IMG/VR virus record: IMGVR_UViG_3300046170_000378
Location: 1-64,000 of that record
Direction: 5' to 3' (one strand)
Length of the DNA: 64,000 bases
Positions 23,182 to 43,798 of this stretch are shown piece after piece. A model generated the notes under the pieces. The model saw only the letters and a list, made by a program, of their open reading frames with translations. It did not search any database and was not told where the DNA came from. Made by a program: the position numbers and the translations under genes. The first letter of the stretch is position 1. Every line of letters begins with the position of its first letter.

Positions 23182-23212
23182 AAGGGCCTCAGGAAACTGA
23201 GGCCCTTTTTTT
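23182..23212 (+). terminator. Intrinsic terminator
   Basis: AAGGGCCTCAG-GAAA-CTGAGGCCCTT followed by a T run. Confidence 0.85.
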
Positions 23213-23251
23213 ATGAGATATATAATCTAAGTTAAATAAATTAATTTTCAC

Positions 23252-24476
23252 ATGTACATAGGAATTACAATAGGCCTTCAGACAGAAAACGAATCTATCT
23301 GGATTAATGGTATTAAAATGAATGCTATATTTTTGATGAACGCACTACAAGTAGCAGGGACACAAGGTAGTATTATTAGATACTCAAACCACCATAGATG
23401 AAAAGGATCTTGATGAAAAAACAGTTTGGGATACTAAAAAATTCCCAATAAAAAAATATATTAGAGAGGCTAACAACACAGACCTCCTAATAATGTTAGG
23501 TACTTCATTGCAAGATTCTACATTAGAGCACTATAAGAAATCTGGACCCAACAAACGCATCATTAAGTATGCATGTGGTAATAACTATGTAATAGATATG
23601 GAGAGATGTATCTTTCCAAAAGAAGGCTCGGAAGACAGTAAGACATATTATCAAAAACTTATTGATGAAGTGTGGTATGTACCTCAACAAGGAATTCATA
23701 ACCACCACTACTATATGTCACTCCATAATTTAGAAGAAGACAAAGTAAAGCCAGTGCCCTTTATATGGGACCCTCTTTTTTTAGATGAAGAATGTGAGAA
23801 TTATATGACTAGACTAAAAGACAACGAAAAAACAGGAGGTTCCCCAGTATATCAAACAGGTAAGCTAGCAGAAAATATAAAATTGTCAGTTTATGAACCT
23901 AATATGAACGTTGTTAAATTTAGTATGATTCCTACTTTAATAGCAAACGAATATCATAAATCAGGTGGCAAATTTGCAGAATTAAATATTATTAGCAGCA
24001 CACGCTTGGCTAAAAACAAATACTGGAAAAGTATAGTATCTTCTTTAGAAATGTGGAAAGCAGAAAGGCCACATGTTAAACTAATGGGAAGATATAATGT
24101 TATTGACATTTTAGCACAAAAAACAGATATTGTTATTTCACATCAATGGGATAATCCTTTAAACTATGCATATTTAGATGCAATGTATTTACAGTTTCCT
24201 GTAATACACAACGCACCTATGATACAGGATGCTGGTTATTATTATGAAGGTTTTAATATACAAGAAGGCACTAAACTACTAAAAGAAGTTATCGAAACCC
24301 ACGATGAAAATCATGAAGCATATGTAGAAAGGTGTGAAGAAGTACTAACAAGATACACCATATACAACGAAGGCCTAATAGAAACATATAATAAATTATT
24401 AGATAATCTAGTAGACGGTAAAAATACACATGGATTATCATATGAATATGATTGGAAAACAAACCTTTATAAGTAA
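23252..24476 (+). CDS. DUF2827-like putative glycosyltransferase (frameshift near 23358)
   Basis: MYIGITIG...ESIWINGIKMN, DIVISHQWDNPLNYAYLDAMY..FPVIHNAPMI..AGYYY. Confidence 0.7.
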
Positions 24477-24478
24477 GT

Positions 24479-25955
24479 ATGAAATACGTTATATCAATGA
24501 CGTCTGTTCCTAGCAGATTTAAAGACACATTACCTCAAGTAATTTCTATGATCAAAGAGAATCTACAAGGTACTCAAATAATTTTATCACTGCCTAAAAC
24601 ATATAGAAAGGGCTGGGAATGGGACATAAAAGACATAGAACATTTATCTGGAGTTACAGTTAATATATTAGATGAAGATTATGGACCAGCTACTAAATTA
24701 TTAGGTGGTATTAAATACGTCAAAGAAAATAAATTAAACATAGATGGTATTATTACATTAGATGATGATATTTTATTTGACAACATAAACGAGGTTGTAT
24801 CTGATTTATTAGAATCGACAATAGAACACAAGGATGAAATTATTACATCAAGCGGATTATTAGTTTGTAATCCACCGTTTAGAATCGGTAATGGAATAAA
24901 AATAGCCATAAATGAATATTCACACTCGGTCGCTGGCTATATGGGTGTTTTTTATCCTAGTAAATTCTGGGACTCATCTTTACCATTTACGGTGCTAGAG
25001 GATTTAAGCGAAGGTTTTTATTCGGATGATGATGCATATTTTGGAGCGGTAGCTCACATAGCTGGAATAAAGATATGGTCAAAATCTAAATCTAAATATA
25101 AATTTAGTGCTATAGATGACATTTCGGTGGTGAGTTTGAGTCAAGAAGGTAATAGACACGAAAGAGAGTCATTGTTGTATAAAGAACTTATTGAAAAGAA
25201 ATTTATAGACACGTCTAATATATCTGATAAAGAAAATAAAGTATGTGCAGTGTTAACATCATGTGGTAGATTAGATCTTCTTAAGGACACATTAAATAGT
25301 TTTATTTTAAACAACACATATTATATAGAAAAGTTTATTATTATTGAAGATTCAGGTGATAAAGAAATTGGCGAGGAATTAATCAAACTTAATAAAGAAA
25401 AATATAAATCAATGTTTACTATTGTTTTAAACGAAAAACAAATAGGCCAAACTGCATCTATAGATAAAGCATATGACATGATCAAAGACGAATGCGATTA
25501 CATATTTCACTGCGAAAACGATTGGCTTTTTTATAAACGAGGTTTTATTGAAGATTCTATCAAAGTATTAGAAACTCAGCCTAAAGTTTTACAAGCATGG
25601 ATTAGACCTAAAAATGACGGCATACTTAATAAAATAGAAGATAAGGTGTTTATGCTTCCAAGTGGAGTGGCTGTTAGAAGGGTTTTGCCAGGTTAATTAT
25701 TCTACTGGTCAAATAAATGAAGATGGAACACCTAGAATAGTACATAATTATATGGGATTTAGTTTTAATCCTGGACTAAAACGAGTTTCTGATTATAAAT
25801 TGATAGGCAATTATAAATCAAAAAACGAAGAGCATTTGGTTGATGCATTTTACAGAGATAATGGATACATGGTAGTAAGCTTATCTACTAATGATCAAGA
25901 AGGTTACGTTAGACATAACGGATGGGATAATAGAACAGAAAATTATGAAGTATGA
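24479..25955 (+). CDS. Two-domain GT-A glycosyltransferase (frameshift near 25688)
   Basis: Domain 1: SMTSVPSRF, DYGPATKLLG, DDDI, DDDAYFG. Domain 2: TSCGRLDLL..TLNSF, IIEDSG, FHCENDW. Confidence 0.75.
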
Positions 25956-26736
25956 TATAAGTTGGATAATGCAAAGTTATTTGGGTGAATATCCAGGTTC
26001 TAGAGCAGATTCAGATAAAAAGTTTATTAGAGCTGTGCGTTCATTTCTTGCAATGAAAAATCCAAAAACTCAGCTTGTAATAGCTAGTGATGGTTGTGAA
26101 ATCACACATGAATTATATTATAAGCATTTTAAAAAACACGATAATATAGCATACGTCTTTGTAGATAAATCTACCCAAAATATGTATGAAAAAATAGAAG
26201 GTCAAACAGAAACCACTAAATTTTATAGAGGTATTCCTAGAGAAGCTGGAAGATCCATAGCAGAAGGTTATCTAATAGCATATATGGATAGTGATGATTT
26301 TTTAATGCCAAACGCAGCCCAAATAATATGCACATATTGGAATGCTAATGTTAAAAATAAACCAGATGCTGACTATAAGTGGACATTTATACAAAATTGG
26401 ATAGAGAACATAGCATTCGAAAATAAAAACAACACATCACAAGATGAGAAGTTTCTTGTAATGCCTACTGGTGATTCATTTAAAATTAAAGGTTTAAAAA
26501 GTAAATGGCAGAAATTTAAAATGAGAAGTGAAGGTAATGTGCTTTCTTCTACTTGGGCCAGTGTACACAGACATGATTGTAATTCTAAATGGAAAGATCA
26601 TGTTTCAGATCCTAAAACCGGTGGAGTTTCAGAGGACACTATATTTTGGAGAAGCATTAGAAAAGAAGGAAAGGGTTTTTTAACACCCGACGGTTTTTAT
26701 GTAAGGTGTCACTATAACGGCATATGGGATTATTAA
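25945..26736 (+). CDS. GT2-like glycosyltransferase
   Basis: LVIASDGC, IAYMDSDDF (DxD), SEDTIF. Confidence 0.75.
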   Translation: MKYDISWIMQSYLGEYPGSRADSDKKFIRAVRSFLAMKNPKTQLVIASDGCEITHELYYKHFKKHDNIAYVFVDKSTQNMYEKIEGQTETTKFYRGIPREAGRSIAEGYLIAYMDSDDFLMPNAAQIICTYWNANVKNKPDADYKWTFIQNWIENIAFENKNNTSQDEKFLVMPTGDSFKIKGLKSKWQKFKMRSEGNVLSSTWASVHRHDCNSKWKDHVSDPKTGGVSEDTIFWRSIRKEGKGFLTPDGFYVRCHYNGIWDY

Positions 26737-26813
26737 AAATATATTATCGAATTGAGCCTTGGCAGAATAAAAGAAAAGATATATACATTAACGCGAAAAA
26801 ATTAAAATAGAGC

Positions 26814-29800
26814 ATGCAACTAAGAATTAAGCAAATTTTAGATTTAATCAGTAGTAATCCCAGTAACGGCGATTACTTTTCATACAACTCTAATACTGGA
26901 CAATATGAAAATACTGCGGCTCCACTTGATGGGACCTCTGTAAAATATGCGACAACGTTTAATGGTCCACATGGAACGGATGAAAGTCGTGGTCCTGGTG
27001 AAGACTTGGGTAGTTTAACTGTAGAAGAAGGTTTATCATATATTGGAGGTGAACTTATTACAATTGTACCAGTCGTTAACCCTGAAAATATTCAAGTAGC
27101 AAGAGTAACCAGCTATAGCGGTACAACTTTGACAATTGAACATATCTCACACACAGGAACTCAATCGTATTCTGGTAGTGAAGATTGGAATATTAATTTA
27201 ACGGGTTTAAGTGGCACGTCTGGCACATCAGTAAAATATGCTACAGTATTTGACGCTCCTCATGGAACAGCTGAAAGCCGTGGTCCTAGTGAAGACTTAG
27301 GTTCTTTAACAATAGAAACAGGCTTATCATATATCGGCGGTGAATATATTACTATTTCACCAGTTGTTAGCCCTGAAAATATTCAAGTAGCAAGAGTAAC
27401 TAGTTACAATGCGACTACTGGTGTTATAACATTTGAACACATATCACACACAGGAACTCAATCATATTCAGGTAGTGAAGATTGGAATCTTAATCTAAGT
27501 GGTGAAAACGGTTCTTCGGGAACTTCTGGAACTTCAGGAACTGATGGCTCTTCAGGAACTGACGGAACTTCAGGAACTGATGGCTCTTCTGGTACAAATG
27601 GTACAGATGGATCAAGCGGTTCTTCAGGTACAAATGGTACAAATGGTTCTTCAGGTGTTGATGGTTCTTCAGGTACTGATGGTACTTCTGGTACAAACGG
27701 TACTGATGGATCAAGCGGTTCTTCTGGAACAAACGGTACAGATGGTTCTTCAGGAACTGATGGCACAAATGGTTCTTCTGGAACTAATGGTACTGATGGA
27801 TCAAGCGGTTCTTCAGGTATTGATGGTAGTCCAGGTTGGGGTATTCAAATGCAAGGCCAAGTTGCAACAGAAGATGATTTACCTGCTGACGATGATTCAA
27901 CACGCTTAGAAGATGGTTATGCTTATATAGTACAATCAGACGATTCTATATGGGTTTGGACTCAAGAAGATGGCTGGATTTCTGGTGGTTCTATTCAAGG
28001 GCCTTCGGGTTCTTCAGGTACTGACGGTACTAATGGAACTTCAGGTACAGATGGTTCTTCTGGCACAAATGGCACAAATGGTTCTTCTGGAACTAACGGA
28101 ACTTCTGGAACTAACGGAACTTCTGGAACTAATGGTACTGATGGATCAAGCGGTTCTTCTGGAACTGATGGAACTTCTGGTACAAATGGCTCTTCAGGTA
28201 CTGATGGCTCTTCTGGAACTGACGGAACAAATGGCTCTTCAGGTACTGATGGCTCTTCAGGTACTGATGGAACTTCAGGAACTGATGGAACTTCAGGTAC
28301 AAATGGTACAGATGGTTCGAGCGGTTCTTCTGGAACTGATGGAACTTCAGGAACAAATGGCTCTTCTGGTACTAATGGAACAAATGGATCAAGTGGTTCT
28401 TCTGGAACTGACGGAACTTCAGGTTCTAATGGATCAAGTGGTTCTTCAGGGTCGAGCGGTGTAAGTGCACAGCAATGTGACGGTTATTCAAGAATAACTT
28501 CAGGTAATTTATTAAGTCCTAATCCATTAGCAGAAGGAAATATTCAACTACTACAAAGCTATAGCGTACATACTACAACAGCAGCTAATGTTGGTTATAT
28601 AAGAATTGGAGAAAATACTCCAGGAACAATTTCGACCATTGCAGGCGGAGAACGTTTTATAAAAATAGAAAACATAGGAGATCCTACTGCATATACTTTA
28701 TTTAATATAAGTAACTACAACGGTGCCTACAAAATATGGTATATTAGTAACGCATTACAATATGGTGGCGGTGCAGACTTAAGTCAAGATGAATTTTGTG
28801 TTTCATCACATACACAATATCTACCGGTAGTAGACGAAGATGGTAGTGCTCCAAGCGAAAGAGGCGTTCCTAATACAAATCTTACATTTCTTTGGGACAA
28901 CGTAAGCGCAACTAGTATATCTTCTGGTGACATAAACATTGATGTAAATTTACAAAATGCAGTCGTAGGAGATCTATATCAATTTAATATTTCGGCTACT
29001 AACTCAAAGGGTACATCAGTGGCCACTGAATTACAGGCAATCAACAGTGTTAATAACACAATGGGTTCTGGATTCTTAACAATATATGATCAAAATTCGG
29101 ACAGTACAGCAACATTTATTGTTCCTTCTAGTCATTCGCAGACTTCAGCTGGATTAAACTTTAGAGATGCAGAGCTTGTTCAAATAAAAGGTCTTTGGGA
29201 AACTACAAAGGGCTTAGATTCTAATGGAAACGAAATATCTATAGATACTGAAGTATTGCTAGGATATGAGTTATTTGGAAACGATGGAACAAGCGGTACT
29301 AATGGTACTAATGGATCAAGCGGATCAAGTGGTTCTTCAGGTTCAAACGGTACAGATGGATCAAGCGGATCTTCAGGTTCGAATGGTTCGAGTGGAACGA
29401 GTGGATCTTCGGGTTCAAGTGGATCTTCAGGAACTGATGGAACTTCAGGAACTGATGGATCAAGCGGATCTTCAGGAACTGACGGAACTTCAGGAACTGA
29501 CGGAACTTCAGGAACAAATGGAACTTCAGGAACTGATGGATCAAGTGGATCTTCGGGTTCAAGTGGATCTTCGGGTTCAAGTGGATCAAGTGGATCTTCG
29601 GGATACGACGTTCCAACAGGTGCAACAGTCGGTGACTTACCAAATGGAGAATACGAAGGACAGATTGGTTTTACTGGAGAAGGTTTAGTTTACATTTGGA
29701 AAGGCGGAGCATGGTCTCCATATTTAGACATGAACGGAACTAGTGGAACAACTGGAACTTCAGGTTCTGATGGATCAAGCGGTTCTTCAGGAACTGATGG

Positions 29801-31802
29801 ATCAAGTGGCTCTTCAGGTTCGAGTGGTAGAAGTGGTACTTCAGGAACTGATGGATCAAGCGGATCTTCAGGAACTGATGGATCAAGCGGATCTTCAGGT
29901 TCAAATGGTTCAAGTGGATCAAGCGGTGTAGACGGCGACAGAGGTGGAAAAGGAATTGAATCATCTAACAATGACGACCCGAATGATGCTGGTATTGTAG
30001 GAGATTACGAAGGAGTGTTATACTATTCTGCTATTGGAACAGTTTGGGTATGGGACAAAGCATCAAACATATGGAAATTTGTAGGAAGCATAAGCGGTTC
30101 TTCAGGAACTAATGGAACAAATGGTTCTTCAGGAACTGATGGTTCTTCAGGAACAAATGGTACAAATGGTTCTTCAGGAACTGATGGTTCTTCAGGAACA
30201 AATGGTACAAATGGATCGAGTGGTTCTTCGGGAACTGATGGCTCTTCAGGAACTGATGGCTCTTCAGGAACTAATGGAACAAATGGCTCTTCAGGAACTG
30301 ATGGCTCTTCAGGAACTGATGGAACAAATGGATCAAGTGGTTCTTCAGGAACTGATGGATCTTCAGGTACTAATGGATCGAGTGGTTCTTCAGGAACTGA
30401 TGGCTCTTCAGGTACAAGTGGTTCTAATGGATCTTCAGGATCGAGTGGTTCTAATGGATCTTCAGGGTCGAGTGGTACTAATGGTACTGATGGATCGAGT
30501 GGTTCTTCGGGTTACCAAGGTGCTTTAACAGGTGAAGAGAGTAATCCAAACAACAATTATACTGGCTCTTTTGCTGGACAGTTATACTTTGCATTTGATG
30601 GAACAGTTTGGTTCTGGGACGGTGCGAGTTGGAAAATAATTAACGATTTAAATGGAACTTCAGGTACTAATGGTACTAATGGATCAAGCGGTTCTTCAGG
30701 GTCAGATGGCTCTTCTGGTTCTAGTGGATCGAGCGGATCTTCAGGAACTAATGGAACTTCAGGAACTAATGGAACTAATGGTTCAAGCGGTTCTTCTGGA
30801 ACTGATGGATCAAGTGGATCAAGTGGATCTTCTGGATCTAGCGGAAAAAACGGAACTAATGGAACTTCAGGTTACCAAGGTGCGCTATCAGGTGAAGAAA
30901 ACGATCCAAATGGCACATACACTGGCTCTTTTGTAAATCAGTTATACTTTGCATTTAATGGATCAGTTTGGTTCTGGGACGGTGTGAGTTGGAAACAAGT
31001 TACTGATTTAAATGGTTCTTCTGGAACTGATGGAACTTCAGGTTCTAATGGATCAAGCGGTACTAATGGTACTAACGGTTCAAGTGGTTCAAGTGGTTCT
31101 TCAGGAACAACTACTATTGACTACAACGTAAAAGATAGAATCTTAGTATCTACTGGAAATTCTACAATAGAAGCTGAAGAAGCTCTAACATATCACAGAG
31201 AACAGAGTATTTTACACACAGCAACAAATAGAAATATCTTTGGTATTGCTGAAGAACATACAATATATGCTGGTGGTTTCGGTATAGGTAACGGTTTAGA
31301 TAAAATGGTTACTGATTATGGCCTAACTGAATGGTATAGATTTGTACCTACTGCTGAAAGATCAGAATATGGAGGAAAATCTCACTTCTCAATAGGAACA
31401 GGTTCTATGTTGGACGAAAGAGATATGTCAGCCCCACAAAATGTTATATGGGACGCATCTTGGCCAAATGGATTTGGTATACAAAAATCTACTAGAAAGC
31501 TCAAGCATGATATTATTGATTTAGATTTTAATGCTGATGAATTCTTTAAACACATGAGACCAGTTTCTTTCAAATGGAACGGAACCGATAGATTAGATTC
31601 AGGTTTTATTGCAGAAGAAGTTGCAGAATTTGATTCTAGATTGGTAGCATGGATGCCAAGTAAAGACGAAGAAAGTGGAGAAGACATTATGGAAGTATCT
31701 TCTGTAAACTATGACAAGATAACTGCATACTTAGTGAAAGTTGTTGGAGATCTTAGAGAAGAAGTTAAGTCTTTAAAAGATGAAATTAAGAAACTTAAAT
31801 AA
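26814..31802 (+). CDS. Tail fibre with Ser/Thr-rich Gly-X-Y repeats and a C-terminal peptidase S74 intramolecular chaperone
   Basis: Long (GTSGTDGSS)n runs; duplicated ~100-aa N-terminal domain; STRKLKHDI...RPVSFKWN...GFIAEEV...VNYDKI plus a terminal coiled coil. Confidence 0.8.
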   Translation: MQLRIKQILDLISSNPSNGDYFSYNSNTGQYENTAAPLDGTSVKYATTFNGPHGTDESRGPGEDLGSLTVEEGLSYIGGELITIVPVVNPENIQVARVTSYSGTTLTIEHISHTGTQSYSGSEDWNINLTGLSGTSGTSVKYATVFDAPHGTAESRGPSEDLGSLTIETGLSYIGGEYITISPVVSPENIQVARVTSYNATTGVITFEHISHTGTQSYSGSEDWNLNLSGENGSSGTSGTSGTDGSSGTDGTSGTDGSSGTNGTDGSSGSSGTNGTNGSSGVDGSSGTDGTSGTNGTDGSSGSSGTNGTDGSSGTDGTNGSSGTNGTDGSSGSSGIDGSPGWGIQMQGQVATEDDLPADDDSTRLEDGYAYIVQSDDSIWVWTQEDGWISGGSIQGPSGSSGTDGTNGTSGTDGSSGTNGTNGSSGTNGTSGTNGTSGTNGTDGSSGSSGTDGTSGTNGSSGTDGSSGTDGTNGSSGTDGSSGTDGTSGTDGTSGTNGTDGSSGSSGTDGTSGTNGSSGTNGTNGSSGSSGTDGTSGSNGSSGSSGSSGVSAQQCDGYSRITSGNLLSPNPLAEGNIQLLQSYSVHTTTAANVGYIRIGENTPGTISTIAGGERFIKIENIGDPTAYTLFNISNYNGAYKIWYISNALQYGGGADLSQDEFCVSSHTQYLPVVDEDGSAPSERGVPNTNLTFLWDNVSATSISSGDINIDVNLQNAVVGDLYQFNISATNSKGTSVATELQAINSVNNTMGSGFLTIYDQNSDSTATFIVPSSHSQTSAGLNFRDAELVQIKGLWETTKGLDSNGNEISIDTEVLLGYELFGNDGTSGTNGTNGSSGSSGSSGSNGTDGSSGSSGSNGSSGTSGSSGSSGSSGTDGTSGTDGSSGSSGTDGTSGTDGTSGTNGTSGTDGSSGSSGSSGSSGSSGSSGSSGYDVPTGATVGDLPNGEYEGQIGFTGEGLVYIWKGGAWSPYLDMNGTSGTTGTSGSDGSSGSSGTDGSSGSSGSSGRSGTSGTDGSSGSSGTDGSSGSSGSNGSSGSSGVDGDRGGKGIESSNNDDPNDAGIVGDYEGVLYYSAIGTVWVWDKASNIWKFVGSISGSSGTNGTNGSSGTDGSSGTNGTNGSSGTDGSSGTNGTNGSSGSSGTDGSSGTDGSSGTNGTNGSSGTDGSSGTDGTNGSSGSSGTDGSSGTNGSSGSSGTDGSSGTSGSNGSSGSSGSNGSSGSSGTNGTDGSSGSSGYQGALTGEESNPNNNYTGSFAGQLYFAFDGTVWFWDGASWKIINDLNGTSGTNGTNGSSGSSGSDGSSGSSGSSGSSGTNGTSGTNGTNGSSGSSGTDGSSGSSGSSGSSGKNGTNGTSGYQGALSGEENDPNGTYTGSFVNQLYFAFNGSVWFWDGVSWKQVTDLNGSSGTDGTSGSNGSSGTNGTNGSSGSSGSSGTTTIDYNVKDRILVSTGNSTIEAEEALTYHREQSILHTATNRNIFGIAEEHTIYAGGFGIGNGLDKMVTDYGLTEWYRFVPTAERSEYGGKSHFSIGTGSMLDERDMSAPQNVIWDASWPNGFGIQKSTRKLKHDIIDLDFNADEFFKHMRPVSFKWNGTDRLDSGFIAEEVAEFDSRLVAWMPSKDEESGEDIMEVSSVNYDKITAYLVKVVGDLREEVKSLKDEIKKLK

Positions 31803-31828: not shown

Positions 31829-34800
31829 ATGCCTAGAAGATCACTAAAAAGTATTGCCAATATGGTTGCAGCTATGAAGTTTGGCAGAAATGCAACAAAT
31901 ATAGCTAACGCAAAAAACGCAAAAATAGGTTTAAATAATCCTGGTTTTAAAGATGCGCATAAACCAAGTGCTTATTCTGCTTCGCAAGAATACACTGATT
32001 TATACACACTTGGCCCAATAATAGACGACATCTTAGATGCAATTCATGCTCTTGAAGATGAATCTGCCGGAATAGGTGAGTATTTACATGATCACTTTGG
32101 ATCCGAAGAAGATAAGATTCAAATACCTGCAGATTTAAGAGTAGAAATAGGAGGCGCTTTTGTTCAAGCTCTATATGAAAACTCAGACAATATAATTATA
32201 GGTGCAGACGTCTTTTTGCCTAATTCAGGTATAGTTAATTTTCAAATAACTGGAAATAATACATTACAAGTAGGTGGAGTACCAATCATTAACGCAAGTG
32301 GAGAATGGATTGGACCTTCTACGGGACTTAAGGGCCAGAAAGGTCAGAGAGGTGTAGCTGGAACTTCAGGAACTGATGGTACATCAGGATCTTCAGGTTC
32401 AAGTGGATCTTCGGGTACTGACGGATCTTCAGGTACTAATGGAACAAATGGATCTTCAGGTACTGACGGATCTTCAGGTACTAATGGAACTAGTGGTGTT
32501 GACGGAGCTAAAGGTCAAAAAGGACAGACAGGCCAAAAAGGACAAAAGGGTCAAACCGGTGCGGCAGGAACTAGTGGTACTAATGGAACCGATGGAACTA
32601 GCGGAATTAAAGGCCAAAAGGGTCAAAAAGGACAAACAGGTTCAACAGGTGCCAAGGGTAACACAGGTAACTTCGGTGGAGCTAGTTTTGATTACACGCA
32701 TGATTCTTCTACAAATGCAATGTCTGACCCAGGAAGAGGTAGAGTTAGAACAAACAGCAATACAATGTCGAGCGTTAGCTCATTAGCAATAGACGCTGAA
32801 GACGATTTTGGTAATGATATTAGTAATTTCTTAACTACTGTAGATGCATCAACATCTGCAGTTAAAGGTTTTGTAAGATTTGCAGAAAAGACAAATACTA
32901 CTTCATTTGTAACATATGCAATATATGATTTAATAAACAGATCAGGTTGGTGGGAATTAAGTGTCGATATGACTGCAACATCTGCACCAACTATTCCATT
33001 TGCAAACGGAGCAGACATTATAATGTCCTTTGTTGTAACTGGTAATGTGGGTGATAAAGGTCAAAAAGGAGCGTCAGGTGTTGATGGAATCTCTGGAACA
33101 TCTGGTCAAGACGGAACATCTGGAACTGATGGTACATCAGGATCTAGTGGATCAAGCGGTTCTTCTGGAACCGATGGATCTTCAGGTACTAATGGTACTA
33201 ATGGATCTTCAGGTTCATCTGGTTCAAGCGGAACTTCAGGTTCATCTGGTTCAAGCGGTACTAATGGTACTAATGGATCTTCGGGTTCTTCAGGATCTAG
33301 TGGATCTTCAGGTTCTTCAGGATCTAGTGGTTATCAAGGCGCAAAAAGTGGTGAATATGGAGATCCAAATAGTGTAAATCTACTTGGAGAATTTAACGGC
33401 CAATTATACTTTGATGGAAACGGTTTTGTTTGGACATGGATCTCAGCAGAAGGCGCTTGGATAAAGGTAAATAATTTAACTGGTCAAAAAGGACAAAAAG
33501 GGCAAACTGGAGCCCAAGGTATTAAAGGTGTTACTGGACCAAAAGGTAATGCTGGTTCTTCTGGAACCGATGGATCAAGTGGATCAAGTGGTTCTTCAGG
33601 ATCGAGCGGAAGAAATGGAACTAGTGGAGTTAACGGTGCTAAAGGACAAACTGGGGCACAAGGTGCTCAAGGTGCACAAGGACCACAGGGTGCTCAAGGT
33701 GTACAAGGTATTAAAGGTCAGAAAGGTCAAAAAGGTCAAACAGGAGCTCAAGGTCCTCAGGGACAAAAAGGTCAAACAGGTTCTCAAGGTTTTCAAGGAC
33801 ATGGTTATACAAAAGCTGCCTTAGATGGTGTAGATTTAGTATTAACACACACGTTAGATGGAGACATTAATGTCGGTAGAGTTTACGGAAATCAAGGTGC
33901 TCAAGGTGCTCAAGGTCAGAAAGGTCAGAAAGGTCAAACTGGTGGTCAAGGTGGTCAAGGTGCTCAAGGTATTAAAGGTGTTACTGGGCCGACCGGACCG
34001 CAAGGTGCTACTGGACCACAGGGTATTAAAGGTGTTACTGGGCCGACCGGACCGCAAGGTGCTACTGGACCACAGGGTATTAAAGGTGCTACTGGTGCTA
34101 AAGGTGTTACTGGACCTAAAGGAAACACCGGTGCTCAAGGACCTACCGGACCACAGGGACCTCAAGGTCATGGCGTTAAAACAGCCTACTTATCAGGCAC
34201 TGATTTAATTATAGATCATACATTAGAAGGTTTAATAAATGTCGGTAGAGTTTATGGAAATCAAGGTGCTAAAGGTCAGAAAGGACAAACCGGTGGCCAA
34301 GGTGGCCAAGGTGCACAAGGTATTAAAGGTGTTACTGGACCGACCGGACCTCAAGGGCCAACAGGTGCACAAGGTGCACAAGGTATAAAAGGTCAGAAAG
34401 GTCAGAAAGGTCAAACTGGAAATACTGGACCTAAAGGAAGTACAGGTGCTCAAGGACCACAGGGTCATGGCTATACAAGAGCCACTCTAGTTGGTGCAAA
34501 TTTAGTATTAACACATACACTAGACGGAGATCTTGATATTGGTAGAGTTTACGGAAATCAAGGTGCTCAAGGACCAACAGGTGCACAAGGTGCTCAAGGA
34601 CCAACAGGTGCTGGCGGTGCTAAGGGACAAAAAGGTCAAAAAGGACAAACCGGTGCTCAAGGTGGTGGAGGTGCTCAAGGAGCTAAAGGTGCAACTGGGC
34701 CAACCGGACCAAAGGGTGCTATTGGTGTTACAGGTGCTCAAGGTCCAACTGGAGCTAAGGGTCAAAAAGGACAAACTGGTGCTCAAGGTGGACAAGGTGC

Positions 34801-35059
34801 TCAAGGTATTAAAGGTGCAACTGGGCCGACAGGACCAAAGGGTTCTACCGGGCCAACTGGGCCGCAAGGTGCAACCGGACCACAAGGTGCAACCGGACCA
34901 ACACTAAACGTTTCCAATAATTCTAACAATAGAATTATCACGGCAACTGGTGGATCTACAGTAAATGCTGAGTCTGCATTAACATTCGATGGAACATATT
35001 TAAATATTAACGGAGCTGGAATATCACACGATGGCACCGTAATGAGATTTACAGTATAA
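31829..35059 (+). CDS. Collagen-like fibre protein (1076 aa), possibly the proximal long-tail-fibre (gp34-position) subunit
   Basis: Long GQK/GAQ/GPT/GIK triplet runs interrupted by repeated HTL(D/E)G..VGRVYG modules; directly precedes the gp35-like gene. Confidence 0.75.
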
Positions 35060-38454: not shown

Positions 38455-39051
38455 ATGGCTTATAGTTTTAAAAGAGATCAAAACGATCCACAACAATATT
38501 ATTGGTTTGAGTCAGGTTTGACTAAAGAAGAACTTATTAAATTTAATAACCTTATTCTAAATTTAGAATATCATGATGCCACGATCATCGGTGATTCTGC
38601 CAGTGGAGAGAAATCATTAGATGTTAGATCTTCTAAAATTAAATGGATTCCGCATTCTAATGATTGGACTTGGTTATATAATAAATTTCAGGATATGATT
38701 ACCGAAGCCAATGGTGAATTATGGAATTTCAATATCTATGACATTGTTGAAGAAATTCAATATACAGAATATCACGCATCTGATAGTGGTCATTATGACT
38801 GGCACCAAGATATTGGCCCTGGAGATGCATCTCTAAGAAAGATTTCGTTGACGGTTCAATTGACAGATTCTGATCTATACGAAGGAGGAGACCTAGAAAT
38901 ATGGCAAGGCGGTGAAGTTAGAGATAAAACACCGAGAGGATCAGGAATAGTTATTATATTTCCAAGCTACATGATGCATAGAGTTACACCAGTTACAAAA
39001 GGTGTTAGAAGGAGTTTAGTATTGTGGGTCGGAGGAGAACATTATAAATAA
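38455..39051 (+). CDS. 2OG-Fe(II) oxygenase (prolyl-4-hydroxylase/PKHD-like)
   Basis: YDWHQD (HxD), RKISLTVQL, YEGGDL, IFPSYMMHRVTPVTKGVRRSLV.W. Confidence 0.85.
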   Translation: MAYSFKRDQNDPQQYYWFESGLTKEELIKFNNLILNLEYHDATIIGDSASGEKSLDVRSSKIKWIPHSNDWTWLYNKFQDMITEANGELWNFNIYDIVEEIQYTEYHASDSGHYDWHQDIGPGDASLRKISLTVQLTDSDLYEGGDLEIWQGGEVRDKTPRGSGIVIIFPSYMMHRVTPVTKGVRRSLVLWVGGEHYK

Positions 39052-39057: not shown

Positions 39058-40092
39058 ATGAGGATTTTGTTTTATGCAGGCTATCAAAGAGTCCCATTAA
39101 ATCAAACAATAAACACTGGAGGAGGGACAGAAATAGCTTTAGTTTCTATAGCCGAAGAAATGGTAAAATTTGGATATGAGGTAATAATCTCAGGTGAAGT
39201 AGAAAAATTAGGTAAAATAAATGGAGTTACTTGGCTGCCTACCCATGAGATTCACCAAACATATGATTATTTTGATGTTATAATAAGTGCAAGCTATATT
39301 CACTTTTTGCATGAATTTAAAAACTATACTTCTGCAAAAAAAGTATTTTGGGCACACAACACACACCACCATGCATGGTATAATGGGTTTGAACTTACTA
39401 GTGCAGATGAGTTAGTCAAAGAAGTAGACGCTACGGTGTGTTTAACAAATTGGCACGCAGACATATGGTCAAAAAAATATAACATCGATAGAGATTCTAT
39501 AAAAATTATAGGAAATGGAATTAACACCAATAGCTTTATTGGAAATCCACCTAAAATTAAAAATAAATTTATATGGTCATCAGAGCCAGAAAGAGGTTTG
39601 ATGTCTTTATTGCACAATTGGCCTAAAATAAAAATGATTAATAATAGTGCATCATTGGACATATATTCACCTGAGTATGGTCTAGATCAATTAGAGCATA
39701 TGATGCCTATTATTAATATGTTAGAAGATGTAAACGTTATTGGAAATAAAAGTCAATCAGAACTGCATGATGCTATGTTAAGAGCAGAATATTGGTGTTA
39801 TATTACAGATTATGAAGAAACATATTGTATCACCGCTTTAGAAATGCAATATGCTAAAGTAATACCTATTGCCACCAAAGCAGCTGCACTTAATGAAACT
39901 ATAAAATCGGGAATTATATGTGACTCTACAGATGAAACAAATTGGAATAGCGCTATATTATCTATAGGTAGAGCGGGTTCACAAATAAAAGAAAAGGTCA
40001 TTGAGTCTAATTATAATTGGGCAAAGTGTCAAACATGGAACCAAAGATCATATGATTGGAAAAACCTAATAGAGAAATTAACACATGAGTAA
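39058..40092 (+). CDS. GT4-like (GT-B) glycosyltransferase
   Basis: GGGTEIAL, IIGNGI, FIWSSEPERGL, EETYCITALE. Confidence 0.8.
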   Translation: MRILFYAGYQRVPLNQTINTGGGTEIALVSIAEEMVKFGYEVIISGEVEKLGKINGVTWLPTHEIHQTYDYFDVIISASYIHFLHEFKNYTSAKKVFWAHNTHHHAWYNGFELTSADELVKEVDATVCLTNWHADIWSKKYNIDRDSIKIIGNGINTNSFIGNPPKIKNKFIWSSEPERGLMSLLHNWPKIKMINNSASLDIYSPEYGLDQLEHMMPIINMLEDVNVIGNKSQSELHDAMLRAEYWCYITDYEETYCITALEMQYAKVIPIATKAAALNETIKSGIICDSTDETNWNSAILSIGRAGSQIKEKVIESNYNWAKCQTWNQRSYDWKNLIEKLTHE

Positions 40093-41380
40093 ATTAAATT
40101 TTGATAAAATCTATATAATATCACTGGACCATAGTCAAAGCGGATATGATAAGATAGCTAAAAAATTAAATGACTTAGGCCTAACTAAATCTGTGCCGTA
40201 TGAGATAATAAATGCACATGATGGAAATACAGATAAGTTGCCAGAAAATTATCACGTTTATGATAAGTGGCAATTATCAGGAAGTAACAATAAATGGTGG
40301 TCTCAAGATGTAACTGCCTCAGAAATAGGATGTGCAATAAGCCATATCAAATGTTGGCAAAAAATAATTAAAGATAATGTTAGATCAGCTTTAATTTTAG
40401 AAGAAGACTTTTTACCGCAAAAACCAATATCTGATTTAAATCAACCTGAGCTAATTTATGATTTAGCGTACTTAGGTAAGTGGTTATTGCCTGAAAAAGA
40501 AGATACTAAAATACCAAATGATGCACAGTGGTTTTATTCAGGTGCGTCTTATAATACACATGCATATATTATTACTAATTCATGTGCTCTTAAATTCCTA
40601 GACTATAACTTACATAAAAATATAATTCCAGTAGATGAGTTTATTATAGCAACATACAGCGATCACCCTAGAAAAGACGTGAGAGAATTGTATGCAAATA
40701 AAAACATAGTAACTATTACACCTAGTGAAGATTATATTGAACAAGAAACTAACACTATGAAAAATACAACATACTTTGAAATATTAGATGATTCTAATTG
40801 GGAAGAATGGAAATCAAAATATGTCAATCACACATTAGCTAAAGGCGAATATGATCTAATGCTAGATGATTTAGGCAACAACGTATACGAATTTCAATTA
40901 TTTACAGAAAAATTCTGTAAAGAAGCTGTTGCACTTGCAGAAGCCAAAGATAATTGGACAATAGACAGACATGAATTTTATCCAACAAACGATGTTCTTT
41001 TACAGGACATTGATTTACAAAAAATATATCATAGAGTATTAAAGGAAGTTGTATATCCTCTTTGTATCCACGTATGGACTCTAGAGGGTGCAGGATGGAA
41101 AGATATGTTTAGTGAAAACTTTATGGCTAGATATACAACAGACAGACAATCACACCTATCATTGCACCACGATTTTAGTCATGTAACTATGGTGGTTAAA
41201 CTTAACGATGAGTTTGAGGGTGGAGGAACTTGGTTTCCAAAATACAACTTGCTATCAAATCCTAAAAAGATAGGAACAGCAACACTGCATCCAGGAATGG
41301 TAACTCACTTACACGGTGCTAGACCAATAGATTCTGGAAAAAGATACATTATAGTATCGTTTATGAGAAAGGAAAAGTAA
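40085..41380 (+). CDS. Fusion of a GT25/COLGALT-like glycosyltransferase and a PLOD-like lysyl hydroxylase domain
   Basis: N-half: KIYIISL, EIGCAISHIKCW, ALILEED, SYNTHAYII, IIPVDEFI...HP. C-half: FTEKFC, LHHDFS (HxD), FEGGGTWF, LHPGMVTHLHGA, GKRYIIVSF. Confidence 0.8.
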   Translation: MSKLNFDKIYIISLDHSQSGYDKIAKKLNDLGLTKSVPYEIINAHDGNTDKLPENYHVYDKWQLSGSNNKWWSQDVTASEIGCAISHIKCWQKIIKDNVRSALILEEDFLPQKPISDLNQPELIYDLAYLGKWLLPEKEDTKIPNDAQWFYSGASYNTHAYIITNSCALKFLDYNLHKNIIPVDEFIIATYSDHPRKDVRELYANKNIVTITPSEDYIEQETNTMKNTTYFEILDDSNWEEWKSKYVNHTLAKGEYDLMLDDLGNNVYEFQLFTEKFCKEAVALAEAKDNWTIDRHEFYPTNDVLLQDIDLQKIYHRVLKEVVYPLCIHVWTLEGAGWKDMFSENFMARYTTDRQSHLSLHHDFSHVTMVVKLNDEFEGGGTWFPKYNLLSNPKKIGTATLHPGMVTHLHGARPIDSGKRYIIVSFMRKEK

Positions 41381-41837: not shown

Positions 41838-42833
41838 ATGATTATAAAAGATTTCCAAACATTTTTAAACGAAAGGTTTGCTGAACATGAGATTCCGCAA
41901 ATTCAAATCATTATGCGAGATATTGGCTTATCGCCAAAACAAGAGGATTTTACAAAAAGAATGTTGGCGGAAATATATGAAAAATATGCTCACTTAGTAC
42001 TAGTTGACGATGATGGGTATAATCAAGACGAGAGGATTCCAGACAATAGAAGACATAACAAAACTAAATATGATGAACCTATTTTAAACTTTATGTCGGT
42101 GTCTCATGTTGAACTTGAAAAAATGAAAGCTCGAGTCTATAACAAAGTAGAAGATATTCAAATAGCTGCAGATAAAATTAAATTCTACAAAGAATTTGAT
42201 CAAACAGATTTTGTTCCAAACTGTGCATACAAACTAGACGACATAGAAAAATTAGAACTTCCAATTATAGCTAAGCCAGCGATAGGTGAAAGTGCACAAG
42301 GAATCGAGAAGTTTGATACGTATGAAGATGCTAAGAGTTCTAAAATGAAATTCGATGTTTGGCAAGAGGCTAAAGAAATAGACAGAGAATTTAGAGCCTT
42401 TGTTATGAATAATAAAATTATCCACTTGTGCGAAAGAGTTACCAATACTAAAAACGACAAATCAGTTGGTAAAAAAGATGCTGATGAAAAAATAGATCTA
42501 GTGTACCTTGATCAAGACATGTCCAAGTTTCCACACATGGATGAAATAGAGAAAATTAAAGAGGAGCTTAGTAAAAAAGTAAAGCTAGAATTTTATAACA
42601 TTGATTTAATGTTAGATAAAGACGGGACGATGTGGGTACCAGAACTTAATGGAAATCCAGGAATTGGTCCAGGTAGTTTTACGGTAATTTACAAGCATTG
42701 GATAGAATGGGTTTATGATCAAGAATTGAGTGAAGAAGTAGATAAAGACCTTAAAGAAATGGCAAAAGCATACCGAGAAGGTATGAAAAAGGAGCATCCT
42801 GATGAATACGCGGGTAGTTTATCACCAATATAA
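41838..42833 (+). CDS. ATP-grasp (RimK-like) ligase with a capsid-targeting-like N-terminus
   Basis: LPIIAKPAIGESAQGI, EFRAFV, IDLM, ELNGNPG; starts MIIKDFQTFLNE. Confidence 0.75.
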   Translation: MIIKDFQTFLNERFAEHEIPQIQIIMRDIGLSPKQEDFTKRMLAEIYEKYAHLVLVDDDGYNQDERIPDNRRHNKTKYDEPILNFMSVSHVELEKMKARVYNKVEDIQIAADKIKFYKEFDQTDFVPNCAYKLDDIEKLELPIIAKPAIGESAQGIEKFDTYEDAKSSKMKFDVWQEAKEIDREFRAFVMNNKIIHLCERVTNTKNDKSVGKKDADEKIDLVYLDQDMSKFPHMDEIEKIKEELSKKVKLEFYNIDLMLDKDGTMWVPELNGNPGIGPGSFTVIYKHWIEWVYDQELSEEVDKDLKEMAKAYREGMKKEHPDEYAGSLSPI

Positions 42834-42868: not shown

Positions 42869-43798
42869 ATGAAAATTAAAGATTTCCAAACATTTATTAA
42901 TGAACGCGATAGTCAATTGCGCAAAGTAATCATGTGTGTTTCTACCGAACTAAGTGACTTTGAGTTTGTAATAGGTGATGATTTTCATGCTAGTCAATAT
43001 ATGGAATTATTTACAAAGGGAGATAATCCTAAAAAAGCCACATTACCTGTAATTAATTTTTGCAATACACACACTGAAAGATTATTAGAAGCGGGTACTC
43101 CAAAGGAATTAATTTATAATCCTAAAGAGAAAAAGATGGAAATAGCATCTAAAGTAAAATGGCATAAAACTCACAACAATTCTGAGCACGTGCCTAAAAC
43201 TATCTTAAACGTAGATGACATTGATCAACTTAAATTTCCTATTATAGCAAAACCTGAGAACAGATTTTCAGGCCAAGGTATAATTAAAATCGATTCACTC
43301 GAGGATGCTAAGGATATGGATCTTTCTGACTTTGAAGTTTTCAGCGAGAAGATAGACATCGATGAAGAACATAGAATAATGATGTGGAGAGGCGAGCCTG
43401 TTATGTGGGTACAAAGAGTACATGGTAACGAGGAGACCAAAAAGATGACTAAGAAAAAGGACGATAAGTTATACTTTAAATATGTACTTAAGAAAATGGA
43501 AGACATGCCACAGGATTGGCAAGCAGTCTTTGATGAATTTGCAGAAGCACATAATGAATTAGACATATATTCAGTTGACTTGATGGTAGATACAGACGGA
43601 AAACCGTGGGTAGTAGAAATGTCTTCTGAATTTATGCCGCTATATGGTGTAATGTCATATTACTATAAAAAAGTTTTTGAAGATTTTTATGGTAAAAAAC
43701 TAAATAAAGAAGAAGAGTCACAGATAGATATGCTTCAGCAAAAAGACGTTGAAGCTACTATTAATTTTGATCAAAAAAGATTTTCAGTAGAAAAATAA
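42869..43798 (+). CDS. ATP-grasp ligase paralog with a capsid-targeting-like N-terminus
   Basis: FPIIAKPENRFSGQGI, EHRIMM, VDLM...WVVEMS; starts MKIKDFQTFINE. Confidence 0.7.
   Translation: MKIKDFQTFINERDSQLRKVIMCVSTELSDFEFVIGDDFHASQYMELFTKGDNPKKATLPVINFCNTHTERLLEAGTPKELIYNPKEKKMEIASKVKWHKTHNNSEHVPKTILNVDDIDQLKFPIIAKPENRFSGQGIIKIDSLEDAKDMDLSDFEVFSEKIDIDEEHRIMMWRGEPVMWVQRVHGNEETKKMTKKKDDKLYFKYVLKKMEDMPQDWQAVFDEFAEAHNELDIYSVDLMVDTDGKPWVVEMSSEFMPLYGVMSYYYKKVFEDFYGKKLNKEEESQIDMLQQKDVEATINFDQKRFSVEK

What the first reader, a model, noticed from the sequence alone, without database searches (positions are those of the whole stretch)
23252..31802. Proline-free, Ser/Thr-rich collagen fibre preceded by a three-gene glycosyltransferase operon
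Seen: the 1662-aa fibre has long perfect Gly-X-Y runs made almost entirely of [12 protein letters not shown], with virtually no Pro. A DUF2827-like protein, a two-domain GT-A protein and a GT2 lie directly upstream, behind the late-type motif at 23217. Established: imino-acid-poor triple helices are unstable, and O-glycosylation of Thr stabilises the Riftia cuticle collagen. Inference: these GTs densely O-glycosylate Ser/Thr, stabilising the helix or building a mucin-like glycan coat. This would be a second arm of fibre modification, distinct from the Lys arm.
Basis: partly seen in the sequence, partly recalled or inferred. Interest (0 to 1): 0.62.

Follow-up and report, generated by a model that had tools for sequence, protein, structure and literature searches.

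The report
Sugar-adding enzymes beside phage collagen fibre
An uncultured marine T4-like phage carries three late-expressed sugar-transferase genes directly in front of a proline-free, serine/threonine-rich collagen-like fibre gene. One of the enzymes belongs to a family that also sits next to trimeric fibrous adhesins in bacteria, so the fibre is probably sugar-coated, though nothing here shows that directly.

Summary
ORF 26814..31802 encodes a 1662-aa fibre with 237 Gly-X-Y triplets in seven runs. Of 474 X/Y positions, 74% are Ser/Thr, 21% are Asp/Asn, and only 2 are Pro. The protein ends in a Peptidase_S74 chaperone domain.

Upstream lie a DUF2827 gene (GT-B/GT4-like fold), a gene with two GT-A domains, and a GT2-like gene. 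In this contig the first two are each broken by a one-base insertion (about 23357 and 25691). Contigs from four independent seawater metagenomes lack both extra bases, and close relatives have intact genes. The breaks are therefore private to this contig.

Support for fibre glycosylation is indirect but comes from several directions:
- In 55 of 76 viral contigs, including all with at least 45% identity, DUF2827 lies 1.2-5.7 kb upstream of a collagen-like ORF on the same strand.
- In bacteria, DUF2827 sits beside YadA-type trimeric adhesins, many of them very Ser/Thr-rich.
- The operon and the fibre gene both carry the motif GATATATA, which also precedes the portal, protease, capsid, sheath and tube genes.
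- None of the three enzymes has a membrane-spanning segment.

The number of glycosyltransferase genes does not track Ser/Thr richness. Unglycosylated (GAS)n already forms a triple helix, so helix stabilisation is unnecessary.

Verdict: partly supported; a new variant of virion-protein glycosylation.

The parts
23182..23207 (+). Terminator-like hairpin (11 pairs, 7 G-C) followed by a T-run. It closes the upstream 377-aa-type gene and sets the glycosyltransferase operon apart.
   Evidence: sequence read
23217..23226 (+). Late-type promoter motif GATATATAAT, 35 nt before ATG 23252.
   Evidence: the same octamer precedes the portal, prohead protease, major capsid, sheath and tube genes
23252..24476 (+). 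DUF2827 glycosyltransferase gene (GT-B, GT4-like fold). In this contig it is split by one extra G at 23356-23358. The intact form is 407 aa.
   Evidence: Pfam PF10933, 231.8-250.8 bits; homologues; break located; extra base absent in 4 metagenomes; AF2 model pLDDT 88.3, Z about 22 to BshA/TarM/MshA
24479..25955 (+). Glycosyltransferase gene with two GT-A domains (N-domain motif ITLDDD, C-domain GT2-like). In this contig an extra G at 25691 causes an early stop at 25696. The intact form is about 491 aa.
   Evidence: AF2 model of P0002, pLDDT 89.4, with Foldseek hits to enzymes with two GT-A domains
25945..26736 (+). GT2-like glycosyltransferase, 263 aa, with an invariant DSDD motif. It is intact and overlaps the end of the previous gene by 11 nt.
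26778..26785 (+). Second copy of the late-type motif (GATATATA), 36 nt before the fibre ATG. No terminator-like site lies between the glycosyltransferase genes and the fibre gene.
26814..31802 (+). Collagen-like fibre gene, 1662 aa. It has a duplicated N-terminal domain, seven Ser/Thr/Asp/Asn-type G-X-Y runs, five roughly 42-52-aa W-x-W spacer modules, a 270-aa central globular part, and a C-terminal S74 chaperone domain.
31488..31628 (+). Peptidase_S74 (endosialidase-type intramolecular chaperone) domain of the fibre, residues 1559-1605.
31829..35059 (+). Second collagen-like fibre gene, 1076 aa. It mixes Ser/Thr-type runs with Gln/Lys/Pro/Thr-type runs and is another possible acceptor.

Best explanation
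This is a late-expressed fibre-modification module of an uncultured marine T4-like phage. Three soluble glycosyltransferases are made together with the virion proteins: a DUF2827 GT-B enzyme, a bifunctional-looking enzyme with two GT-A domains, and a GT2-like enzyme. I propose that they attach sugars in the cytoplasm to the collagen-like fibre encoded immediately downstream, and probably to the next fibre as well.

The most likely order is that DUF2827 adds the first sugar to Ser/Thr hydroxyls and the GT-A enzymes extend it. The seven Ser/Thr-rich triple-helical segments would then carry a dense, mucin-like glycan coat. The coat most plausibly shields the fibre, stiffens it or tunes its adhesiveness. 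It is not needed to let the helix form.

Shown here: the gene identities and folds, the shared promoter motif, the conserved adjacency, and that the genes are intact in the natural population. Inferred: the acceptor, the O-linkage, the order of action, and the role of the glycan.
For: 1. Adjacency in phages. Of 76 viral contigs with a DUF2827 relative, 55 carry a large collagen-like ORF on the same strand, starting 1.2-5.7 kb after the DUF2827 start. These 55 comprise every locus with at least 45% identity (52 loci) plus three at 31-37%. The adjacency holds although the genes in between and the collagen composition vary.
2. Independent association in bacteria. DUF2827 genes that are 31-37% identical lie beside YadA-type trimeric autotransporter adhesins, often in 2-3 tandem copies. 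Several adhesins are extremely Ser/Thr-rich, for example Polaromonas (2290 aa, S+T 54%) and Ralstonia (1698 aa, S+T 38%). A preprint reports the same association and proposes adhesin glycosylation (10.64898/2026.01.22.700529).
3. Timing. The motif GATATATA lies 35-36 nt before both the operon and the fibre gene. It also precedes the portal, protease, capsid, sheath and tube genes. A different, sigma-70-like motif precedes small early-type genes. No terminator-like site separates the glycosyltransferase genes from the fibre gene.
4. Enzyme properties. DUF2827 has a GT-B/GT4 fold (Z about 22; the protein O-GlcNAc transferase SdgB is among the matches at Z 18.6). The second protein has two GT-A domains, like enzymes that add two different sugars. 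None has a TM-like segment.
5. Acceptor density. 349 of 474 X/Y positions are Ser or Thr.
6. Selection. The genes are intact in four independent metagenomes and in relatives.
7. Context. All collagen-like genes of the contig lie at 16-38 kb, together with other likely collagen-modifying enzymes: 2OG-Fe(II) oxygenases and a GT25-oxygenase fusion.
8. Precedent. Phage-encoded glycosyltransferases are reported to glycosylate mycobacteriophage capsid and tail-tube proteins (Freeman et al. 2023, as cited in PMC12619734).
Against: - There is no direct evidence of a glycan on any protein.
- The phage adjacency may partly reflect inherited gene order within one clade, so the number of independent events is small.
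- DUF2827 also precedes collagens poor in Ser/Thr; in L032/L033 S+T is only 0.02-0.03 of X/Y positions. Ser/Thr of the triplets may therefore not be the acceptor, or not the only one.
- Glycosyltransferase number does not follow Ser/Thr content.
- The fold does not reveal the acceptor. T4 DNA alpha-glucosyltransferase and LPS or teichoic-acid enzymes score almost as well.
- In the window's own contig two of the three genes are broken. If that is real, this particular genome would lack the activity.
- None of the three genes has a tblastn match in 50,697 deposited phage genomes, apart from the third gene in two records of an uncultured 735-kb phage. Collagen-like phage fibres therefore do not generally need them.
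Confidence: 0.5

Rival explanations
1. The enzymes remodel the host cell envelope (O-antigen, LPS core or capsule) during infection, for example to block superinfection by competing phages. They sit in the fibre region only because that region is the phage's hypervariable host-recognition cluster.
For: This is the published reading of glycosyltransferases found in the host-recognition cluster of pelagimyophages and cyanomyophages (PMC7029224). The GT4 and GT2 folds are typical of LPS and polysaccharide enzymes such as WaaG, TarM, heparosan synthase and chondroitin synthase. The operon has a lower G+C content (0.306 at 24-26 kb) than its neighbours, as an acquired cargo gene would.
Against: The operon carries the late-type motif shared with virion genes, not the early-type motif. 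Exclusion of competitors would be expected early. DUF2827 keeps strict adjacency to a fibre gene while the other genes come and go. Bacterial DUF2827 genes sit by adhesin genes, not in O-antigen clusters. The operon has no membrane-embedded partner such as a flippase, polymerase or lipid-carrier transferase, and no TM segments.
Confidence: 0.2
2. The enzymes glycosylate virion proteins other than the Ser/Thr-rich triplets. Candidates are the non-collagen domains of the fibres, or other structural proteins such as the capsid, sheath, or the 632-aa and 377-aa-type proteins encoded upstream.
For: Late-type expression fits any virion target. DUF2827 also precedes collagens with almost no Ser/Thr in their triplets (L032/L033). 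In mycobacteriophages the reported acceptors are capsid and tail-tube C-termini.
Against: The constant neighbour of DUF2827 is a collagen-like or adhesin gene, not a capsid or tail-tube gene. Bacterial neighbours are strikingly Ser/Thr-rich. In the window the densest supply of hydroxyl acceptors by far is the collagen runs.
Confidence: 0.17
3. The enzymes modify phage DNA by glucosylating a hydroxymethylated base, as T4 alpha- and beta-glucosyltransferases do.
For: T4 alpha-glucosyltransferase is among the structural matches of the DUF2827 model (Foldseek E 1.5e-9; Z 19.6). The contig encodes a thymidylate-synthase-family enzyme at 8679..9608.
Against: GT4 enzymes with non-DNA acceptors match better (Z about 22). 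That enzyme's best family match is ordinary thymidylate synthase (phrog_160, E 3.8e-105). The promoter is of the late type. Bacterial DUF2827 genes accompany adhesins. The operon lies inside the fibre module in every related phage.
Confidence: 0.03
4. The genes are decaying cargo (pseudogenes) with no present function in this phage.
For: In the window as given, two of the three genes carry frameshifts.
Against: All four independent metagenomes lack both extra bases at full depth. Relatives have intact genes at 83-98% identity. Other genes of the contig are split in the same way: 16128-18948, 21990-23140 and 211040-211740. That points to errors in the contig.
Confidence: 0.05

Closest known systems
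DUF2827 (PF10933) genes next to trimeric autotransporter adhesins in Burkholderia, Polaromonas, Ralstonia and others
   Same: Same Pfam family (231.8-250.8 bits; 31-37% identity). The proteins are soluble and have a predicted GT-B fold. The genes lie directly beside a gene for a long, trimeric, often Ser/Thr-rich fibrous surface protein.
   Different: There the neighbour is a YadA-type outer-membrane adhesin, and the genes often come in 2-3 tandem copies. Here the neighbour is a collagen-like phage fibre, the gene is single, and two GT-A-type genes follow it. The function is untested in both settings.
Glycosylated collagen-like exosporium protein BclA of Bacillus anthracis (own knowledge, not checked here)
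   Same: A microbial collagen-like filament with Thr-containing G-X-Y triplets that carry O-linked oligosaccharides.
   Different: BclA triplets are mostly GPT and so are proline-rich. Its enzymes belong to other families. It is a spore-surface protein, not a virion protein.
Mycobacteriophage virion glycosylation (Freeman et al. 2023, cited in PMC12619734)
   Same: Phage-encoded glycosyltransferase genes next to structural genes, which modify virion proteins.
   Different: The reported acceptors there are the C-termini of capsid and tail-tube subunits. No collagen repeats or DUF2827 genes are mentioned in the citing text I read. Glycosylation there is shown by experiment; here it is only inferred.
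Serine-rich-repeat adhesin and SD-repeat glycosylation in Gram-positive cocci (GtfA/B, dGT1/GalT1, SdgA/B; own knowledge plus weak matches)
   Same: The logic is the same: a GT-B enzyme starts O-glycosylation of a Ser-rich repetitive fibrous adhesin in the cytoplasm, and GT-A enzymes, one of them with two domains, extend the glycan. SdgB is a structural match (Z 18.6). GalT1 is a weak profile match of the third gene (E 0.0012).
   Different: The similarity goes no further than the general GT4 and GT2 folds. There is no GtfB-like partner and no accessory Sec export. The substrate is a collagen-type triple helix.
Animal and Mimivirus collagen hydroxylysine glycosylation (COLGALT1, LH3, Mimivirus L230/R699)
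   Same: The enzyme with two GT-A domains gives Foldseek matches to COLGALT1, LH3 and Mimivirus R699 (E about 1e-9 to 1e-10). The same phage encodes a GT25-oxygenase fusion downstream.
   Different: The matches are no better than those to heparosan or chondroitin synthases, and TM-scores are about 0.3. This fibre has only 2 Lys among 474 X/Y positions, so hydroxylysine cannot be its main acceptor.
Riftia cuticle collagen with galactosylated Thr
   Same: An imino-acid-poor collagen with Thr in the triplets. Glycosylation of Thr raises the stability of its helix.
   Different: It is an animal extracellular collagen with Thr in the Y position. Here Thr is in X and Ser in Y. An unglycosylated (GAS)n already folds, so stabilisation is not required.

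Membership tests
Collagen triple-helix repeat proteins (PF01391), bacterial/phage collagen-like fibres | Long uninterrupted Gly-X-Y repeats | tested here: met
   Pfam E 1.5e-93 in 15 stretches; 237 triplets in seven runs of 11-52.
Collagen triple-helix repeat proteins (PF01391), bacterial/phage collagen-like fibres | A trimerising or registering non-collagen domain next to the repeats | tested here: met
   C-terminal Peptidase_S74 intramolecular chaperone domain, 28.9 bits against a cut-off of 22. Five conserved W-x-W spacer modules lie between the runs.
Collagen triple-helix repeat proteins (PF01391), bacterial/phage collagen-like fibres | The repeats actually form a triple helix | not testable with these tools
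   Only a precedent is available: proline-free (GAS)19 gives a triple-helix CD signal at 25 C (PMC7682875).
DUF2827 (PF10933) | Profile match above the curated cut-off over the full length | tested here: met
   231.8-250.8 bits against a cut-off of 25. Profile positions 1-39 and 37-362 are covered by the two fragments.
DUF2827 (PF10933) | One intact reading frame | tested here: not met
   The gene is split by one extra G at 23356-23358 in the window. The frame is intact in four metagenomes and in relatives.
DUF2827 (PF10933) | Glycosyltransferase fold | tested here: met
   AF2 model of the 92%-identical P0242, pLDDT 88.3. It has a GT-B fold with Z 22.5 to BshA, and Z 22.1 to TarM and to B. anthracis BshA.
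DUF2827 (PF10933) | Neighbourhood of a trimeric fibrous surface-protein gene | tested here: met
   Collagen-like ORFs in 55 viral loci. YadA-type adhesins in bacterial loci.
GT-A / GT2 glycosyltransferases (PF00535) | Profile match above the cut-off | tested here: inconclusive
   Third gene: 14.7 bits against a cut-off of 23.3, though many of its homologues carry PF00535. For the two-domain gene, homologues of the C-domain carry PF00535. The N-domain has no Pfam match; it gives only ESM Atlas leads to GT2-like clusters.
GT-A / GT2 glycosylttransferases (PF00535) | Acidic DXD-type metal/nucleotide-sugar motif conserved | tested here: met
   Invariant D115-S-D-D118 in the third gene. Invariant D95-D-D97 in the N-domain. 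Conserved ED-S and CE-x-DW in the C-domain.
Phage virion-protein glycosylation systems | Phage-encoded glycosyltransferases co-located and co-expressed with structural genes | tested here: met
   The operon abuts the fibre gene. The late-type motif is shared with the capsid, portal, sheath and tube genes. Expression itself is inferred from the motif.
Phage virion-protein glycosylation systems | A glycan demonstrated on a virion protein | not testable with these tools
   This needs mass spectrometry or staining of virions or of co-expressed proteins.
Phage DNA glucosyltransferases (T4 AGT/BGT type) | Early expression together with a hydroxymethyl-base pathway | tested here: not met
   The motif is of the late type, not the early type. 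The ThyA-family gene matches ordinary thymidylate synthase best. A dCMP hydroxymethylase was not specifically excluded.
Collagen hydroxylysine glycosyltransferases (COLGALT1/LH3/Mimivirus L230) | Lys or hydroxylysine in the Y position as acceptor | tested here: not met
   The fibre has 2 Lys among its 474 X/Y positions. In the second and third fibres, Lys fills 21-25% of Y positions.

The most novel reading that the evidence does not exclude
DUF2827 defines a family of cytoplasmic O-glycosyltransferases, present in both bacteria and phages, that is dedicated to long trimeric fibres: YadA-type adhesins in bacteria and collagen-like tail fibres in a widespread clade of marine T4-like phages. In these phages it starts a dense, mucin-like glycan coat on proline-free Ser/Thr collagen. 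Part of what the host sees of the fibre would then be sugar rather than protein.
Probability: 0.35. Interest if true: 0.72.

Novelty: new variant of a known kind. Interest (0 to 1): 0.55.

Why it matters
Tail fibres decide which cells a phage can infect. If abundant marine phages coat their collagen-like fibres with sugars, predictions of host range from fibre sequence would miss part of the recognition surface. The many glycosyltransferases in marine phage host-recognition regions are currently read as host O-antigen modifiers (PMC7029224), and some of them would need re-annotating as virion-modifying enzymes.

The finding also gives DUF2827 a testable function that links phage fibres with bacterial trimeric adhesins. 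DUF2827 is an uncharacterised family mentioned in only two papers of the searched library. In addition, the fibre is a natural proline-free Ser/Thr collagen, which could be used to study how triple helices are stabilised.

Tried and rejected
- DNA and protein searches of the three genes against 50,697 deposited phage genomes found nothing. The only exception was the third gene, in two records of an uncultured 735-kb phage. No isolate is available for comparison.
- Profile searches against PDB sequences gave nothing useful for DUF2827 or for the N-domain of the second gene, and only weak GT2 matches for the C-domain and the third gene.
- Programmed +1 frameshifting at the two breaks was considered and rejected. 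The sites are not slippery, and all four metagenomes simply lack the extra base.
- The classic T4 late motif TATAAATA is not the one used here. It occurs 18 times, mostly inside genes.
- Nucleotide-sugar genes: no NTP_transferase was found. One epimerase/dehydratase lies at 211040-211740, split over two frames. The sugar donor therefore remains unknown.
- I did not run complex prediction, because a transient enzyme-substrate contact with a repetitive fibre is not a fair test for it. I did not run the large representative-protein search, because the word search had already found hundreds of homologues.
- The host could not be assigned. No psbA was found in the contig. The major capsid protein is only 50.7% identical to its best match, an uncultured 462-kb phage. 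One related contig is binned in a Flavobacteriaceae MAG, which may be a mis-binning.

Full report
**What the window is.** The window is the first 64 kb of a 212,342-bp IMG/VR viral contig that CheckV rates 76% complete. It is a T4-like phage. Its Gp23-type major capsid protein is only 50.7% identical to its nearest deposited relative, an uncultured 462-kb phage. No psbA was found. Twenty seawater or marine metagenome runs, each from a different study, hold 75-91% of the sampled words of 22000-26800, so this is a common marine phage population.

**The fibre.** ORF 26814..31802 encodes 1662 aa.
- Pfam finds Collagen repeats (E 1.5e-93, 15 stretches) and a C-terminal Peptidase_S74 intramolecular chaperone domain (residues 1559-1605; 28.9 bits, cut-off 22).
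- There are seven G-X-Y runs of 11-52 triplets, 237 triplets in all, making 43% of the protein.
- The 474 X/Y positions hold S 237, T 112, N 51 and D 49, with only two Pro and two Lys. X is T 47% / S 46%. Y is S 54% / N 21% / D 20%.
- Between the runs lie five roughly 42-52-aa modules with a conserved Y...W-x-W...W pattern. There is also a duplicated N-terminal domain and a 270-aa central globular part.

**The three upstream genes.**
- Gene 1 is DUF2827 (PF10933, up to 250.8 bits). An AF2 model of the 92%-identical homologue P0242 (pLDDT 88.3) has a GT-B, GT4-like fold. It scores Z about 22 against BshA, TarM and MshA, 18.6 against the protein O-GlcNAc transferase SdgB, and 19.6 against T4 DNA alpha-glucosyltransferase.
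- Gene 2 has two GT-A domains. The model of P0002 has pLDDT 89.4. Its best Foldseek matches are other two-domain enzymes: heparosan synthase 2, Mimivirus R699, human COLGALT1, chondroitin polymerase, LH3 and LARGE1. E-values are about 1e-9 to 1e-11, with low TM-scores because the domain arrangement differs. Both domains also occur as stand-alone proteins.
- Gene 3 is a 263-aa GT2-like protein with an invariant DSDD motif. Its own Pfam score is below the cut-off, but many homologues carry PF00535.
- None of the three has a TM-like hydrophobic segment; the highest 19-residue Kyte-Doolittle mean is 1.3 or less.

In the window, gene 1 is split by an extra G in the run at 23356-23358, into 23252..23401 and 23355..24476. 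Gene 2 stops early because of an extra G at 25691, and its last 87 aa continue in the next frame to 25955.

I laid the contigs of four independent seawater metagenomes on 22000-26800. Every contig that covers these sites lacks the extra base, at full depth in all four runs. The close relatives L005-L008 have intact genes of 407, 468-490 and 256 aa.

Other genes of the contig are split in the same way:
- the 377-aa-type gene at 21990-23140, where the four runs also lack two bases;
- a collagen-like gene at 16128-18948, which lies in three frames;
- an epimerase gene at 211040-211740.

The breaks are therefore private to this contig and are most simply read as sequence errors. The natural population carries intact genes.

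**Timing.**
- The octamer GATATATA occurs 38 times in 212 kb, mostly 12-65 nt upstream of gene starts.
- The genes behind it include the portal, prohead protease, major capsid, tail sheath and tail tube genes, as identified by PHROGs.
- It also precedes the glycosyltransferase operon (35 nt before ATG 23252), the fibre gene (36 nt), the first collagen gene (16090) and the 2OG oxygenase gene (38416).
- A different motif, ATGTCAA-N8-TGGTATATTAG, resembles a sigma-70 promoter and precedes small genes.
- A strong terminator-like hairpin at 23182-23207 precedes the operon. None separates the operon from the fibre gene.

The operon is thus predicted, though not shown, to be transcribed late together with the fibre.

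**Comparative evidence in phages.** A scan of IMG/VR found 76 loci with a DUF2827 relative. In 55 of them a large collagen-like ORF starts 1.2-5.7 kb after the DUF2827 start, on the same strand. These 55 are all loci with at least 45% identity plus three at 31-37%.
- The genes in between vary: none, the GT2-like gene alone, the C-domain gene plus the GT2-like gene, or the full trio. The full trio occurs only in the window and L005-L008.
- The collagen type also varies. Some are Ser/Thr-rich and proline-free (S+T 0.62-0.86 of X/Y positions). Others are Q/K/T/P/D-type (0.02-0.29). L032/L033 have almost no Ser/Thr in their triplets.

More distant viral DUF2827 genes (27-33% identical) come as tandem pairs without collagen. 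Many of them sit in structural modules, some near Gly/Ser/Thr-rich large proteins.

**Comparative evidence in bacteria.** A scan of one genome per species gave 80 loci, mainly from Burkholderia, Polaromonas, Ramlibacter and Ralstonia.
- There DUF2827 lies next to YadA-type trimeric autotransporter adhesins, often in two or three copies. Pfam confirms YadA_stalk, YadA_anchor and ESPR domains.
- Several adhesins are extremely Ser/Thr-rich: Polaromonas (2290 aa, S+T 54%) and Ralstonia (1698 aa, 38%).
- 43 of the 80 loci hold an ORF of at least 400 aa with S+T of at least 25% within 10 kb.
- A 2026 preprint reports the same association independently and proposes adhesin glycosylation.

This second association involves distant family members and a different kind of trimeric fibre. 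It is the strongest argument that DUF2827 enzymes act on fibrous proteins.

**Interpretation.** The best-supported model is that the trio is a late fibre-modification module. DUF2827 probably starts O-glycosylation of the fibre in the cytoplasm, and the GT-A enzymes extend the glycan, giving a mucin-like coat on the Ser/Thr-rich helices. I put this at about 0.5.

An unglycosylated (GAS)19 segment made in E. coli shows a triple-helix CD signal at 25 C (PMC7682875). Here each run is also flanked by folded modules and ends in a trimerising S74 domain.

**Rivals.**
- Host envelope remodelling, about 0.2. This is the published reading for glycosyltransferases in pelagimyophage host-recognition clusters.
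- Glycosylation of other virion proteins or of non-collagen domains, about 0.17.
- Pseudogenes, about 0.05.
- DNA glucosylation, about 0.03.

**Context.** All collagen-like genes of the contig lie at 16-38 kb. Downstream of the third fibre lie a 2OG-Fe(II) oxygenase, a GT4, a GT25-oxygenase fusion and two ATP-grasp genes. In the second and third fibres Lys fills 21-25% of Y positions, while the Ser/Thr fibre has almost none.

**Novelty.** Only two papers in the searchable library mention DUF2827, and neither concerns phages. Searches that combined collagen-like fibres, phages and glycosylation found no description of this arrangement. Virion glycosylation by phage enzymes and glycosylated microbial collagens are both known, so I rate this a new variant of a known kind.

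**Limits.** The main limitation is that the acceptor and the glycan are inferred entirely from gene neighbourhood, fold and promoter motifs.

Noticed in passing
window 22601-22636, 23356-23358, 25691; also 16128-18948 and G000 211040-211740: The contig carries single-base insertions that split several genes: the 377-aa-type gene, DUF2827, the two-domain glycosyltransferase, a collagen-like gene lying in three frames, and an epimerase. Four independent metagenomes lack the extra bases wherever they were laid (22000-26800). Gene calls on this contig should therefore be checked for frameshift errors.
   Followed up: partly
whole contig; for example window 16090, 21928, 23217, 26778, 38416, 41826, 42857, 45787, 55495, 60209: There are two promoter-like motif classes. 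GATATATA(A/T) precedes virion and fibre-module genes, and in several cases lies only 12 nt before the ATG. ATGTCAA-N8-TGGTATATTAG, which resembles an extended -10 sigma-70 promoter, precedes small genes (for example 45372, 52704). The classic T4 late box TATAAATA is not enriched upstream of genes.
   Followed up: partly
window 38455-43798: A second set of likely collagen-modifying genes lies behind the third fibre: a 2OG-Fe(II) oxygenase (38455..39051), a GT4 (39058..40092), a GT25 fused to a 2OG oxygenase (40085..41380), and two ATP-grasp ligase-like genes (41838..42833, 42869..43798). In the neighbouring fibres Lys fills 21-25% of Y positions.
   Followed up: partly
window 26814-31802 (residues 344-395, 933-974, 1050-1094, 1239-1280, 1359-1400): Five conserved modules of about 42-52 aa with a Y...W-x-W...W pattern separate the collagen runs. 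The N-terminus holds two copies of a domain of about 95 aa. No family match was found for either, and neither was folded.
   Followed up: no
L092:59-6928, L094:32-6844, L146:4849-9942: Trimeric autotransporter adhesins of about 1,700-2,300 aa with 38-56% Ser+Thr, from Polaromonas, Ralstonia and a MAG labelled Synechococcus. Each is followed by two or three tandem DUF2827 genes. They are candidate heavily glycosylated adhesins.
   Followed up: partly
L086 (PAUJ01000018.1, 44 kb): A contig binned in a Flavobacteriaceae MAG has the same phage gene order: collagen gene, 632-aa gene, 627-aa gene, DUF2827 (51% identical), C-domain glycosyltransferase, GT2-like gene, collagen gene. This is either a mis-binned phage contig or a hint at the host group.
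   Followed up: no
window 31829-35059: The second fibre is a mosaic. Ser/Thr-type triplet runs like those of the first fibre alternate with Gln/Lys/Pro/Thr-type runs, which suggests recombination between collagen cassettes.
   Followed up: no
window 46825-47634, 54030-54965, 56186-60199: Unusual cargo for a phage: a full DnaJ homologue (J domain plus C-terminal domain), a UvdE UV-damage endonuclease, and a 1337-aa protein with a DUF5824 match and a PHROG cytidylyltransferase-family match.
   Followed up: no
G000 149727-151187 (L004): The major capsid protein is only 50.7% identical to its nearest deposited relative, an uncultured 462-kb phage (LR756500). The next best matches are another uncultured 635-kb phage (32%) and the Lak megaphages (about 40% over 76% of the query). 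The contig therefore belongs to a poorly sampled lineage of large aquatic phages.
   Followed up: partly
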